A stretch of DNA of 64,000 bases, from the NCBI GenBank assembly GCA_044892505.1, contig CM097884.1:77996001-78060000 (forward strand). Direction: 5' to 3'. Source of the stretch: Schmidtea nova. Its lineage: Eukaryota. Below, piece after piece: positions 19,301 through 22,300 of this stretch (position 1 is the first letter of the stretch; the number at the start of each line of letters is the position of its first letter). The notes beneath the pieces were generated by a model. The model saw only the letters and a list, made by a program, of their open reading frames with translations. It searched no databases and was not told where the DNA came from. Position numbers and translations under genes: made by a program.

Positions 19301-22300
19301 AAGTACATAAAACAACTCCATCTATAGAAGAAACAAAATGCCAGATCCTACAAGAGGGATTCAAAAATTCATTACAAAGATTAGCTTCCGAGACTTTTTT
19401 CATAAAAAAATACAAACCGTCCATCAACATTCAATTCGCACAAAAAAATTAAAATAAAATAAATTTTTTCATCCAATAAAATCATTATAAAATATTAAAA
19501 AAATAATTAAGGCTACTATTTAGGATTAAGTAAATATAACGATAGAAATACACACTTGATAAAGGCTGTGCCGAAATATTGTGTTATTGTTTATAAAAAA
19601 AAATTTTGATCTATAGTCATTATGAGAATTATTGATAATAATAATAAAAAAAGATCAAAGGTGAAAAAAGATAATTATGATAGTATATTGGCGGACGCCC
19701 ATCACCGAGTAGATCTATCGTTATTTTATAGTCTCAAAATCATCAAAATCAAATCACACTTACATTTTTTAAAAGAATGCAAAAGAAGAAACATCATTCC
19801 CGTGGGCCTGACTGTTACCAACAAACTGGAATCAACCTATCCATCTTTACAAGCATTGAAGCTTAAAGAAAAACAGGAAAAAGAATGGCTTAAGCTTAGC
19901 ATTTCAGCTTGTTACAAAAAGCTAAACGAATTTACTAGTTTTCCTTGTGCTCCTCTTACTTGTGAAGATAATACTTGTTGCCAGAATTTCTCCAAAAATC
20001 TCGACATTCGCAAGCATAAAAAATTAGAAAAGCTACTTTCAACAAATTCAAACAACACTAAAGACACTAACTCACACTCAAATTCAATTCTTCCATTTAC
20101 AAACAAATCTAATCACATTTTTTCAAAAACACAAGAAAACATCCTCGCTCTAGGACCATCTTTTGTTCCTCCACCTAACCAGAAAGATTTAGAAAAAGCC
20201 GAAATCATCACTAACGCCTCTCTTATAAGCCTAAGAAGACAAATAGGATACCATCTAAAACCAATTTCATCCACCAAATCTTCAAGTTTAGCTGAAAAGC
20301 ACAATCATCTTCTGGATCCAAATCGTAGAACATATCCAAATATGCCTGTCTTTTCGACTGAACTTGAAGAAAAACTCAGCTGTTTAGAAACTAAAGTCAA
20401 AACTTTAGTCAGAGAACAAATTATCTTTCTTGAAAAACATTGCTCAACACAAAATTCTTTCACTTCAAACATAAAGAAAATTAAGAATTCCAAAGACTTC
20501 ACAATTCTTCCATCAGATAAAACAAATCGACTAATTGCTCTTGACACAGAACAATACAATACTCTATTTGAAGAACATCTCTCGAACTATGAACCGATAA
20601 ACAAAATAATCTTACCTGCATCGACTCAGATTTTATACAATAAGAAACTTTCAACACTTGCAAATAAACAAATTAACCTTCAAATCAAAGATTTACTTTT
20701 AAAATGCAACTGCAGTGAGCCTTTACCTAGTAATATGACTATGTTACCTAAAGATCACAAAAGTCCTTTAAAAGGTAGACCTCTTGTATCTGCAGTTGAC
20801 ACTCCTTCCACAACACTTTCTAAAGTTCTTTCAGAAATTCTAAAAACACTTTTGCCTTTGGTTCCTTCTCATCTTAAAAACACAACTGAATTCGTCTCCG
20901 AAATTACAAATACGTCTCTTCCGTTAAACTCAGGACAACAGTACTTCTGGGGATCTCTTGACGTTTCCAATCTTTACGGATCTATTCCTCTTCACGGAGA
21001 GAATAACATTTTCGATATCGCAGCTTCTTTCTTTGAAACTCATAAAGCCAATACTGACCTCGCAGACTTAACTAAACAAGACTTTATAGAACTTCTAAAA
21101 TTAGCAATAAATTCAGATACTGTCATAATTAAAGAAAAACCATTCAAACAAATTCATGGATTAGCCATGGGTAATAACCTTTCTCCCATCTTAGCCATCT
21201 TCTACATGAACTTTATAGAATCTAAGATCATATCTTTTTTTGGGGACAAAATACTTTTCTGGAAACGATACATCGACGACATCTTCATAGTCTCCACAAT
21301 CCCTCTCAATCAAATCCTATCACACGCAAATTCTACTAACACCAACATACAATTTACTTTTGAAACACCGAACACAGAAGGTAAAATACCGTTTTTAGAT
21401 ACCATGGTAAGTTTCACAAAAGGCCAAGATACACTAAATGCAAACACCGAGCTATATTCTAAAGGTTTACATAGCGGTCATATCCTCCCATGGAAAAGCC
21501 ACGTTCCACTTCAACGCAAAATCGCATTACTAATAGGAGAAAGAAAAAGAGCCATAAGAAACTGTTCAGACGCAAACAAAATACAAGAAACATTAGAAAA
21601 CTTCAAAATACGATTCCTCCAAAATGGATACCCTGAAGACTTTGTAAAGAAACACTTCCTTAACGAACCATACCACAATAAACGCAACAATAGAAAACGC
21701 CAGAAATACAATAACAATAACAAACACACAACATATCTAAGATTACCTTTCCTAAATGACACTACAGCCAACAAAATCACCAACATTTTTAATCAAACAG
21801 ATTTGCCTATCCACATCCGTCCAACGTTCATAACCTCCGCACCGTTAAAATCACAACTCCGAAAGCCACCAATTTCCAACATCTCCAAACATAAATGTCT
21901 TTGTCGTTCCACAACCCGATGCTTTTGCTTTTCCAAAAATATAGTATATAAACTTTCTTGTCAAAAATGTGACGCTACTTACATAGGAGAAACACATAGA
22001 ACTTTTCGCACCCGACTTAATGAACATACTAAAATCAAAACCAGTAATTATTACGAACACTGGGAAAAAGTACATAAAACAACTCCATCTATAGAAGAAA
22101 CAAAATGCCAGATCCTACAAGAGGGATTCAAAAATTCATTACAAAGATTAGCTTCCGAGACTTTTTTCATAAAAAAATACAAACCGTCCATCAACATTCA
22201 ATTCGCACAAAAAAATTAAAATAAAATAAATTTTTTCATCCAATAAAATCATTATAAAATATTAAAAAAATAATTAAGGCTACTATTTAGGATTAAGTAA

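What the first reader, a model, noticed from the sequence alone, without database searches (positions are those of the whole stretch)
19552..19584. Non-canonical minimal hammerhead (U3-A8 covariant core) in every family 1 terminus
Seen: acac-UUGAUAA-a-ggc-ugu-gcc-GAAA-ua-UU-gugu occurs seven times identically (six in the array, one at 40888), plus older variants (55453, about 42205, 53160). Known: C3-G8 is a base pair in the hammerhead core, and PLEs carry minimal type I hammerheads with a palindromic stem III that cleave as dimers. Here C3-G8 is swapped to U3-A8, so a CUGANGA search would miss it. The same extra A after A9 occurs in the canonical ribozyme at 31211. Older copies have an AUC cleavage triplet and the young copies AUU. 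Activity is inferred.
Basis: partly seen in the sequence, partly recalled or inferred. Interest (0 to 1): 0.72.

Follow-up and report, generated by a model that had tools for sequence, protein, structure and literature searches.

The report
Known-type variant hammerhead in Penelope retrotransposon
The repeated 33-base motif is a real minimal hammerhead ribozyme motif carried in the terminal repeats of a Penelope-like retrotransposon. Its unusual U3-A8 core pair is conserved and covaries in related elements, but this variant was already described in 2014, so it is a new example of a known kind.

Summary
The 33-nt motif occurs 8 times exactly, not 7: seven copies in the 16.9-26.2 kb array and one at 40888. 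Diverged or decayed copies lie at 55454, 42205, 53150, 54630 and 54463.

It sits on the sense strand about 100 nt after the stop and 41 nt before the ATG of an 865-aa RT + GIY-YIG ORF. That places it in the pseudo-LTR of a Penelope-like element (PLE) with a 2767-bp unit.

Relatives fetched from public assemblies (25-55% protein identity) carry the same motif at the same place. Stems I and II covary. The 3-8 pair is U-A in 9 rows, C-G in 6 and G-C in 2, and is always Watson-Crick. The extra nucleotide after A9 is always present. The A15.1-loop-U16.1 tetranucleotide is always palindromic (AUAU, AAUU, ACGU, AGCU), which is the signature of hammerheads that act as dimers.

It is not new: Cervera and De la Peña (2014) reported U3-A8 min-hammerheads in Schistosoma PLEs, together with the extra nucleotide and the palindromic helix III.

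Self-cleavage remains inferred. PLE min-hammerheads cleave poorly in vitro, and a 2024 study found cleavage dispensable for insertion in vitro.

The modest extra here is that the 3-8 pair switched identity several times within this group of related PLEs, including natural G3-C8 cores.

The parts
19552..19584 (+). U3-A8 minimal type I hammerhead motif, upstream pLTR copy of the intact + strand element. Layout: stem I ACAC/GUGU, core UUGAUAA, extra A, stem II GGC/GCC with loop UGU, GAAA, loop UA, U16.1, U17. Predicted cleavage is between 19580 and 19581.
   Evidence: 43.9 bits with model R1; the MFE is exactly the two-stem hammerhead fold
22319..22351 (+). Identical motif, downstream pLTR copy of the same element, 2767 nt after the first. 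Predicted cleavage after 22347.
22625..22657 (+). Identical motif in a 143-nt pLTR fragment (22617-22759) that ends in (ATT)n.
26107..26139 (+). Identical motif in a 5'-truncated + copy (25655-26241) that ends in (ATT)n.
17021..17053 (-). Identical motif in a 5'-truncated minus-strand copy (16988-19262). The copy is cut at 16987/16988 by an N-run, so its true 3' end is unknown.
22576..22608 (-). Identical motif in a 106-nt inverted pLTR fragment (22510-22615), head-to-head with the copy at 22625.
22879..22911 (-). Identical motif, downstream (3') copy of the inverted full-length element 22813-25653.
40888..40920 (+). Identical motif in a separate 5'-truncated copy (40370-41000, 97-99% identical to the unit). 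The copy is cut by an N-run starting at 41001.
55454..55486 (+). Older subfamily copy: U3-A8 kept, G10.1 changed to A (A.C mismatch), cleavage triplet AUC. It lies in a 5'-truncated copy (54863-55594) whose GIY-YIG part is 67% identical in protein.
42205..42237 (-). Older copy: core UCGAUAA (U4 to C), one stem I mismatch, AUC. A decayed inverted partner lies at about 42250-42290.
53150..53181 (-). Decayed copy: the UUGAUAA and GAAA boxes are kept, stem II and stem I are broken.
54630..54666 (-). Decayed copy (A6 to U, stem II mismatch). Another decayed copy lies at 54463-54498(-).
31208..31252 (+). Canonical C3-G8 min-hammerhead of a different PLE family: core CUGACGA, extra A, 6-bp stem II, AUAUAU palindrome, UC. 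It lies 365 nt downstream of a GIY-YIG fragment (30577-30843).
   Evidence: (19.4 bits)
19622..22219 (+). Intact 865-aa PLE ORF: reverse transcriptase plus C-terminal GIY-YIG endonuclease.
23011..25608 (-). Second intact 865-aa PLE ORF, in the inverted full-length copy 22813-25653 (100% complementary to 19577-22417).
19279..19686 (+). Pseudo-LTR: a 408-nt stretch repeated at 22046-22453 and 25834-26241. It holds the last 174 nt of the ORF, the 3' UTR, the hammerhead, the 5' UTR and the first 22 codons.
19581..22347 (+). Predicted unit-length RNA (2767 nt) that would be released if both flanking hammerheads cut. This is an inference.
   Evidence: inferred

Best explanation
The motif is the pseudo-LTR hammerhead of an EN+ Penelope-like retrotransposon, of the minimal type I kind (min-HHR), in the known core variant where the C3-G8 pair is replaced by U3-A8.

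Shown here:
- Every other catalytic-core position is canonical: U4, G5, A6, A9, G12, A13, A14, A15.1-U16.1, H17 = U, and G10.1-C11.1.
- It lies on the sense strand between the stop codon and the next ATG.
- The homologous site in related PLEs keeps the same architecture, with covarying stems and a 3-8 pair that is always Watson-Crick.

Inferred mechanism: a monomer has no helix III, only A15.1-UA-U16.1. Two copies on one transcript, or on two transcripts, would pair their palindromic AUAU tetranucleotides into a shared 4-bp helix III. Same-strand copies lie 2767 and 306 nt apart on the + strand and 303 nt apart on the - strand. That would form two active sites that cut after U17 (19580 | 19581), leaving a 5'-OH and a 2',3'-cyclic phosphate.

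A8 paired to U3 would hold the 2'-OH of residue 8 (the general acid) as G8-C3 does. This rests on Martick and Scott 2006 and on published rescue by 3/8 double mutants.

Cleavage of tandem or read-through transcripts would release unit-length 2767-nt RNA. By analogy with the Anolis PLE, it probably needs the element's own protein or other factors to be efficient.
For: - Location and element: RVT_1 plus GIY-YIG ORF and a 2767-bp partial tandem with inverted copies. This is the published PLE layout.
- Homologous motifs sit on the sense strand next to the RT ORF in L001, L004/5, L006-L011, L014, L015, L026/27, L028, L029, L031 and L032.
- A descriptor that leaves N3, N4, N8, the extra nucleotide and loop 3 free returns 18 hits (15 distinct motifs) in about 90 kb of loci. 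All are on the sense strand, all have a Watson-Crick 3-8 pair and all have a palindromic loop 3.
- Pair counts: 93.4% of cells paired against 62% in shuffles, with 0 of 500 shuffles reaching the observed covariation score; slid controls give 28-51%. The 3-8 pair is UA:9, CG:6, GC:2. Loop 3 is UA:7, CG:5, AU:4, GC:1. Stem I and II pairs show 3-5 pair types each.
- On the RT tree the U-A state appears in at least 3 separate places and G-C in two. The pair was therefore kept through repeated changes.
- Literature: U3-A8 PLE min-HHRs, the extra nucleotide between 9 and 10.1, G10.1-C11.1 and palindromic helix III are described, and dimer and trimer constructs of an S. mansoni min-HHR cleave. The C3G/G8C double mutant partly restores cleavage in a PLE hammerhead.
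Against: - No activity data exist for this sequence.
- Stems are very short (4 and 3 bp) and the dimer helix III would be four A-U pairs. The fold is not more stable than shuffles (z = -0.89).
- Published PLE min-HHRs cleave poorly in vitro.
- In the Anolis PLE the ribozyme needed protein, catalytic mutants did not affect insertion in vitro, and no RNA-seq ends were found at the cut site.
- In this window the insertions extend about 110 nt past the predicted cut site to (ATT)n. Their template RNAs were therefore not cut at the 3'-most hammerhead.
- Two relatives with intact ORFs (L002, L030) keep both stems but have a damaged 5' core box. PLE clades without hammerheads also thrive. The ribozyme is thus not strictly required for spread.
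- The loci were partly selected with stem-requiring descriptors and a model trained on them, so the stem pairing percentages are inflated. The 3-8 and loop 3 results are not affected.
Confidence: 0.82

Rival explanations
1. The motif is a conserved structured RNA element that descends from a hammerhead, but its selected role is not self-cleavage. It might be a binding or assembly site for the PLE protein near the reverse-transcription start. Cleavage would then be weak, incidental or absent in the U3-A8 form.
For: - In the Anolis PLE, hammerhead mutants did not change insertion, and cleavage needed the protein.
- PLE min-HHRs have low in vitro activity.
- L002 and L030 keep long stems I and II with a broken 5' core next to intact ORFs.
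- Insertions in the window include sequence 3' of the cut site.
Against: The nucleotides that stay invariant across 17 diverged motifs are the catalytic ones: G5, A6, A9, G12, A13, A14 and A15.1-U16.1. The 3-8 pair and the dimerisation palindrome are maintained through changes of identity. A generic protein-binding hairpin would not be expected to keep these. Plant, fungal and protist PLEs carry fully active hammerheads.
Confidence: 0.13
2. The motif is a dead relic: a canonical hammerhead inactivated by two core substitutions. It would look conserved in the window only because the copies are very young.
For: The eight copies are identical and the whole 2.8-kb copies are 99.9-100% identical, so within-window identity says nothing about selection. 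The older copies in the window show decay, not compensation.
Against: The same U3-A8 core with different stems occurs in PLEs whose proteins are only 25-55% identical to this one (L001, L006, L010, L011, L014, L031). It sits in several places on the RT tree. Two independent inactivating hits that always restore a Watson-Crick pair are not credible.
Confidence: 0.03
3. The resemblance is due to chance or to another kind of element. In AT-rich DNA, TTGATAA and GAAA are common words. The motif could instead be part of a terminal inverted repeat or a miRNA-like hairpin, as the sub-threshold mir-31 and mir-875 hits at 22564-22669 might suggest.
For: - A loose descriptor gives several spurious hits in the window.
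- Rfam gives no hammerhead hit even at E up to 10.
- mir-31 scores 44.3 bits, below its gathering score of 51.
Against: - The strict descriptor gives 0.005 hits per shuffled window.
- The hairpin hits are simply the head-to-head junction of two inverted pLTR fragments.
- Rfam also misses every canonical C3-G8 PLE min-HHR in the relatives, so its silence is uninformative.
- The element is a retrotransposon with RT and GIY-YIG, not a TIR transposon.
Confidence: 0.02

Closest known systems
U3-A8 min-hammerheads of Schistosoma mansoni Cercyon PLEs (Cervera and De la Peña 2014, Mol Biol Evol 31:2941; PMC4209133)
   Same: The same core covariation (U3-A8 instead of C3-G8) and the same location in PLE pseudo-LTRs. 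Also the same unpaired nucleotide between A9 and 10.1, the G10.1-C11.1 pair, the missing helix III with a palindromic 15.x-16.x segment, and the short helix I.
   Different: The host is different: the window is AT-rich and carries insect-type host domains. Helix II here is far smaller (3 bp plus a 3-nt loop, against 7-8 bp in S. mansoni). The copies here are identical and young, while the schistosome motifs are highly heterogeneous. The paper reports the variant in one sentence and one inset, and does not say that its activity was tested.
Canonical C3-G8 PLE min-hammerheads (Penelope/Poseidon, Neptune, Xena and others; Cervera and De la Peña 2014; Lünse, Weinberg and Breaker 2017, as cited in PMC6765202)
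   Same: The architecture, position, extra nucleotide and dimer logic. Close relatives of this very element carry them at the homologous site (L004, L007-L009, L015, L028, L032; window 31208-31252).
   Different: Only the identity of the 3-8 pair differs.
Poseidon PAc hammerhead of Anolis carolinensis (Mob DNA 2024; PMC11167929)
   Same: A PLE hammerhead near the ORF start. The 3-8 pair was shown experimentally to act as a pair: the single mutants are dead and the C3G/G8C double mutant is partly active. Reverse transcription starts inside the ORF, downstream of the ribozyme, which matches the window's insertions ending about 110 nt past the cut site.
   Different: The PAc ribozyme overlaps the start codon and has a C3-G8 core. 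Here the motif lies wholly in the 5' UTR, 41 nt before the ATG, and the natural core is U3-A8.
Dimer-dependent type I hammerheads of newt satellite 2 and ASBVd (Forster et al. 1988) and the CChMVd (+) hammerhead with an extra A after A9 (De la Peña and Flores 2001)
   Same: An unstable helix III compensated by a double-hammerhead structure, and an extra nucleotide between A9 and G10.1 that is compatible with activity (cited).
   Different: Those have a C3-G8 core, longer helices with loop-loop contacts, and no retrotransposon ORF.

Membership tests
Hammerhead ribozyme (catalytic core) | Invariant core nucleotides U4, G5, A6, A9, G12, A13, A14 | tested here: met
   All are present in the 8 young copies. 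G5, A6, A9, G12, A13 and A14 are invariant across 16-17 distinct related motifs, and U4 is present in at least 90%.
Hammerhead ribozyme (catalytic core) | C3 and G8 as those bases (the CUGANGA box) | tested here: not met
   The box is UUGAUAA. The literal consensus fails and a CUGANGA search misses it.
Hammerhead ribozyme (catalytic core) | Positions 3 and 8 form a Watson-Crick pair | tested here: met
   U-A here. Across relatives the pair is UA:9, CG:6, GC:2 with no unpaired case. All 18 hits of a descriptor that leaves both positions free are Watson-Crick.
Hammerhead ribozyme (catalytic core) | A15.1-U16.1 pair and a non-G residue at the cleavage site (H17) | tested here: met
   A-U in 17 of 17 distinct motifs. 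H17 is U in the young copies and C in the older ones.
Hammerhead ribozyme (secondary structure) | Helices I and II supported by compensatory changes | tested here: met
   The three inner stem I pairs have 4-5 pair types and pair in 16-17 of 17 motifs. Stem II pair 10.2-11.2 is GC:7, AU:5, CG:5. None of 500 shuffles reach the observed score, and slid controls collapse. Caveat: the motifs were found with stem-requiring searches.
Hammerhead ribozyme | Site-specific self-cleavage giving 5'-OH and 2',3'-cyclic phosphate | not testable with these tools
   No experiment or RNA data are available here. Published PLE min-HHRs cleave weakly as dimers.
Hammerhead ribozyme (Rfam models) | A match to an Rfam hammerhead covariance model | tested here: not met
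   No hammerhead hit at gathering score, or at E up to 10. This is uninformative, because the canonical C3-G8 PLE min-HHRs in L004, L007, L009, L015 and L028 and at window 31208 are missed too.
PLE minimal hammerhead (min-HHR of Cervera and De la Peña 2014) | An unpaired nucleotide between A9 and 10.1, and a G10.1-C11.1 closing pair | tested here: met
   The extra nucleotide is A in 16 of 17 distinct motifs and U in one. G10.1-C11.1 occurs in 15 of 17.
PLE minimal hammerhead (min-HHR of Cervera and De la Peña 2014) | No stable helix III, and a palindromic 15.x-16.x segment that allows a dimeric helix III | tested here: met
   AUAU here. AUAU, AAUU, ACGU or AGCU in 17 of 17 distinct motifs. L015, with a 3-nt loop, is the one exception outside that alignment.
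PLE minimal hammerhead (min-HHR of Cervera and De la Peña 2014) | Located in the pseudo-LTR of a PLE, on the sense strand | tested here: met
   The motif lies 100 nt after the stop and 41 nt before the ATG, in the 408-nt repeat flanking the ORF. The placement is the same in the relatives.
Penelope-like element (EN+) | [quoted passage not shown] | tested here: met
   RVT_1 at E = 1.3e-7. GIY-YIG at E = 1.6e-6, 28.8 bits against a cut-off of 22.6. Homologues carry RVT_1, HTH_animal and GIY-YIG.
Penelope-like element (EN+) | Partial tandem copies forming pseudo-LTRs, adjacent inverted 5'-truncated copies, and insertion next to microsatellites | tested here: met
   A 2767-bp unit with a 408-nt pLTR, 2841-nt and 2275-nt perfect inverted arms, and 3' ends abutting (ATT)n. 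This matches the description.
mir-31 / mir-875 miRNA precursors | A score at or above the Rfam gathering threshold, and a hairpin that is a unit of its own | tested here: not met
   44.3 against 51 bits, and 30.4 against 84 bits. The hairpin is the junction of two inverted pLTR fragments and scores equally on both strands.

The most novel reading that the evidence does not exclude
In this group of related arthropod-type PLEs the hammerhead 3-8 pair behaves as an ordinary, freely covarying Watson-Crick pair. It has switched between C-G, U-A and G-C several independent times. This includes natural G3-C8 cores (L029 GUGAACA; L026/L027 GCGAUCA, which also has C at the otherwise invariant U4). I found no description of these in the papers I could search. 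If they are active, nature has already run the 3/8 swap experiments, and these ultra-minimal cores of about 30 nt would define which hammerhead core positions truly need a given base identity.
Probability: 0.4. Interest if true: 0.45.

Novelty: new member of a known kind. Interest (0 to 1): 0.3.

Why it matters
- For annotation: standard tools (the Rfam models and CUGANGA descriptors) miss these motifs entirely, even the canonical PLE ones. PLE termini in AT-rich arthropod genomes will therefore go unlabelled unless a 3-8-tolerant model is used.
- For ribozyme biology: the data add independent natural support that residues 3 and 8 act as a pair whose identity is exchangeable. They also supply very small natural cores (33 nt with stem I) for testing.
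- For PLE biology: the element looks recently active, with two intact identical ORFs. That would make it a convenient system for asking whether hammerhead cleavage matters for Penelope transposition, which is still open after the 2024 in vitro work.
- None of this changes the known picture. It extends it.

Tried and rejected
- Rfam at gathering and at E up to 10 on the window and on 11 related loci gave no hammerhead hits at all. This is uninformative because the canonical PLE min-HHRs are missed too.
- Single-sequence thermodynamics: the MFE is the expected two-stem fold, but z = -0.89. Cofold of two copies only gave trivial domain-swapped duplexes and cannot model the double hammerhead.
- Covariation among the window's own older copies: they show decay, not compensation. 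Against the 55-kb subfamily copy, the motif is 94% identical compared with 82% for the whole pLTR. It ranks only 29th of 390 windows, so this is not decisive.
- Using copy boundaries as evidence for cleavage did not work. The ends at 16988 and 41000 are N-runs, not real ends, and I did not try to fill them. The 5' end of the inverted full copy (25653) lies 0-4 nt from the predicted cut site. The local sequence is internally repetitive (GTGTTATT occurs twice), so the exact end is ambiguous and it is a single case.
- MAFFT misaligned two motifs with longer loop 3 (window 31208, L015), so they were left out of A3 and A5.
- Literature: Lünse et al. 2017 (PMC5785218) and the supplement of Cervera and De la Peña 2014 are not held. 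I could not check whether G3-C8 or arthropod U3-A8 variants are listed there.
- I did not use structure prediction, the large protein-representative search or the viral or genome contig scans. The question did not need them.
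Full report
**1. What is in the sequence**

The string at 19552-19584 reads as the finding says. Allowing 3 mismatches, it occurs 8 times exactly:

| Position | Strand |
|---|---|
| 17021 | - |
| 19552 | + |
| 22319 | + |
| 22576 | - |
| 22625 | + |
| 22879 | - |
| 26107 | + |
| 40888 | + |

It also occurs once with two mismatches at 55454. None of 100 shuffles gave a match.

The window is AT-rich (24-34% GC) and contains eight N-runs. Two of them cut family copies, at 16660-16987 and 41001-41173. 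I left them as they are and drew no conclusions from those ends.

**2. The element that carries it**

The motif lies 41 nt before the ATG of an 865-aa ORF (19622-22219) and about 100 nt after the stop of the preceding unit.

[quoted passage not shown] The VYKLSC...YIGET...R...EH signature is visible.
- Its 28 database relatives carry RVT_1, HTH_animal and sometimes GIY-YIG. They sit on contigs of about 2.5-3.6 kb.
- The repeat unit is 2767 bp. A 408-nt stretch (19279-19686) is repeated on both sides of the ORF.
- An inverted full-length copy (22813-25653, second intact ORF 23011-25608) is 100% complementary to 19577-22417.
- A 5'-truncated inverted copy occupies 16988-19262.
- Short pLTR fragments lie head-to-head around 22616.
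- Three copies end in an (ATT)n microsatellite.

This is the published anatomy of EN+ Penelope-like elements: partial tandems forming pseudo-LTRs, adjacent inverted 5'-truncated copies, a preference for microsatellite targets, and a hammerhead in the pLTR (PMC8557442).

**3. Is it a hammerhead? Single-sequence evidence is weak**

Every core position except 3 and 8 is canonical. The minimum-free-energy fold of 19550-19586 is exactly stem I (4 bp) plus stem II (3 bp). However, it is no more stable than shuffles (z = -0.89).

Rfam gives nothing at gathering score or at E up to 10. It equally misses the canonical motif at 31208 and all canonical PLE motifs in relatives, so this is uninformative.

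The sub-threshold mir-31 and mir-875 hits at 22564-22669 are the junction of two inverted fragments.

A strict descriptor written after the fact hits only the 8 copies, against 0.005 hits per shuffled window. The copies are one family, so this amounts to one event.

**4. Comparative evidence is strong**

I fetched contigs that encode relatives of the ORF. I scanned them first with a descriptor that leaves positions 3 and 8 free, then with a covariance model built from 16 motifs (R1).

Next to the RT ORF, always on its sense strand and tens to a few hundred nt from its end or start, the relatives carry the same small motif:

| 3-8 pair | Loci | Core box |
|---|---|---|
| U3-A8 | L001:288-324, L006:1466-1502, L010:2515-2553, L011:3048-3089, L014:1827-1865, L031:412-449 | UUGANAA |
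| C3-G8 | L004:733-767 and 3503-3537, L005, L007, L008, L009, L015, L028 (two copies), L032, window 31208-31252 | CUGANGA |
| G3-C8 | L029:2795-2829 | GUGAACA |
| G3-C8 with C4 | L026:2438-2474 = L027:32-68 | GCGAUCA |

The relaxed descriptor left N3, N4, N8, the extra nucleotide and loop 3 unconstrained. All 18 of its hits have a Watson-Crick 3-8 pair and a palindromic loop 3. By chance each property would hold about a quarter of the time.

Pair counts on 17 distinct motifs (similar):

- 93.4% of cells pair, against 62% in shuffles.
- The covariation score is 0.868 against 0.221, and 0 of 500 shuffles reach it.
- Sliding the 3' partners drops pairing to 28-51%.
- The 3-8 pair is UA:9, CG:6, GC:2.
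- Pair 10.2-11.2 is GC:7, AU:5, CG:5.
- The three inner stem I pairs each have 4-5 pair types.
- A15.1-U16.1 is invariant.
- Loop 3 is UA:7, CG:5, AU:4, GC:1.

The stem figures are inflated because the search required stems. The 3-8 and loop 3 figures are not.

On a maximum-likelihood tree of the RT region, the window's element groups with L001 and L006, which are all U-A (support 97/92). Other U-A elements sit elsewhere: L010+L014, L031 and L011. The well-supported branches force at least 3 changes of that state, and the two G-C elements are not sisters.

The 3-8 pair has therefore changed identity repeatedly while staying a pair. That is what selection on a hammerhead core predicts. It also excludes the readings of a dead relic or a chance resemblance.

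**5. The window's own older copies**

These do not add covariation:

- 55454 has an A.C mismatch at 10.1-11.1.
- 42205(-) has C4 and a stem I mismatch.
- 53150(-), 54630(-) and 54463(-) are broken.

Both U and C are common at position 17 among the relatives.

**6. How it most likely works**

Shown: the architecture, the placement, the conservation and the dimer palindrome.

Inferred: two motifs pair their AUAU segments into a joint helix III and cut after U17. This would release a 2767-nt unit RNA (19581-22347) from tandem or read-through transcripts.

This follows the dimer model for PLE min-HHRs (PMC4209133; PMC6765202). It also follows the structural role of the 3-8 pair. In PMC11167929, single C3G or G8C changes kill a PLE hammerhead and the double change partly restores it.

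Cautions:

- In vitro activity of min-HHRs is low.
- The Anolis ribozyme needed the element's protein and was dispensable for insertion in vitro, where reverse transcription starts inside the ORF, downstream of the ribozyme.
- The window agrees with that last point. Insertions run about 110 nt past the predicted cut site before meeting (ATT)n, so the RNA that was copied had not been cut at its last hammerhead.
- L002 and L030 have intact ORFs and good stems but a damaged 5' core box.

I therefore put about 0.8 on the reading that this is a selected member of the PLE hammerhead family. I put less, perhaps 0.6, on efficient self-cleavage in vivo.

**7. Comparison with what is known, and novelty**

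Cervera and De la Peña (2014) state that homology searches with the Cercyon PLE of Schistosoma mansoni revealed a variant with 'U3-A8 instead of C3-G8', and that a descriptor with this core retrieved about 1,300 hits. They list as hallmarks the nucleotide between 9 and 10.1, the G10.1-C11.1 pair and the palindromic 15.2-16.2/loop 3.

The present case is a new member in a different host, with an unusually small helix II.

What I did not find in the searchable literature is natural G3-C8 cores or evidence of repeated 3-8 switching within one group of related PLEs. Two relevant sources could not be read, so I claim this only as a possibility.

**8. Verdict**

Novelty: a new member of a known kind. 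Interest is modest at 0.3.

Noticed in passing
L029:2795-2829 (and a degenerate copy at L029:3-37); L026:2438-2474 = L027:32-68: Related PLEs carry min-hammerheads with a G3-C8 core: GUGAACA, and GCGAUCA which also has C at the normally invariant U4. They are otherwise complete, with the extra A, G10.1-C11.1, GAAA, the ACGU palindrome and UC. G3-C8 is seen in both flanking copies of L029. The L026/L027 motif is seen both upstream and downstream of the ORF in two assemblies, so it is not a read error.
   Followed up: partly
L002:86-121 and L030:172-204: Two relatives with intact ORFs (713 and 838 aa) keep a long stem I (5-6 bp), stem II, GAAA and the AUAU palindrome. Their 5' core box is shortened (CUUUGAA and UUUAA instead of NUGANNA). 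These may be inactivated ribozymes kept for another role, or recent decay.
   Followed up: no
window 22449-22523, 22755-22826, 26237-26278: Three family copies end at the same unit position, about 110 nt past the predicted cleavage site and about 23 codons into the ORF, directly against (ATT)n microsatellites. This fits internal initiation of reverse transcription and the microsatellite targeting reported for PLEs.
   Followed up: partly
window 25636-25665: At the head-to-head junction, the 5' end of the inverted full-length copy falls 0-4 nt from the predicted hammerhead cut. In the copy's sense, the 8-mer that starts at the cut site (GTGTTATT) appears twice in tandem. This is suggestive of a ribozyme-processed 5' end, but it is ambiguous because the native sequence is itself repetitive, and it is a single case.
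   Followed up: partly
window 22311-22919: Two near-identical palindromic modules of about 300 nt, each reading hammerhead, 5' UTR, first codons, (ATT)n, then the inverse. They place same-strand hammerheads 306 nt (+) and 303 nt (-) apart, so a transcript could release a small retrozyme-like RNA or fold into long dsRNA. The sub-threshold mir-31 and mir-875 Rfam hits come from here. It could also be an assembly artefact.
   Followed up: no
window 19600-19621; L001:~330-350; L006:~1510-1530; window 55500-55524; window 42160-42190(-): A conserved box (TTTTGRTCTWTWGTCA) lies 20-35 nt after the predicted cut site, just before the ATG, in the window's family and its closest relatives. The sequence between the cut site and the box is poorly conserved. 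It may be a promoter or initiator, a translation signal or a protein-binding signal.
   Followed up: no
window 30577-30843 and 31208-31252: A 3' remnant of a second, distant PLE family. The GIY-YIG fragment is 36% identical in protein to the family 1 ORF, and its own canonical C3-G8 min-hammerhead lies 365 nt downstream, followed by (AT)n.
   Followed up: partly
window 13432-13468: A weak hit of the hammerhead model (14.5 bits) with a perfect 6-bp stem I and a 3-bp stem II, but with A3/A8 and AUAA in place of GAAA. It may be a very old decayed PLE hammerhead. No RT remnant was detected nearby.
   Followed up: no
window 26293-27298: Immediately after the array there are direct repeats with a period of 562-572 bp (26293-26459 / 26865-27031 and 26437-26736 / 26999-27298). 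They are unrelated to the PLE unit.
   Followed up: no
window 11080-11886(-) and 28273-28848(-): Host-type ORFs: one with a Spin-doc zinc finger (E = 2.6e-11) and one with a weak insect HPS5 TPR match. Together with 24-34% GC this suggests an insect genome. The organism was not identified.
   Followed up: no
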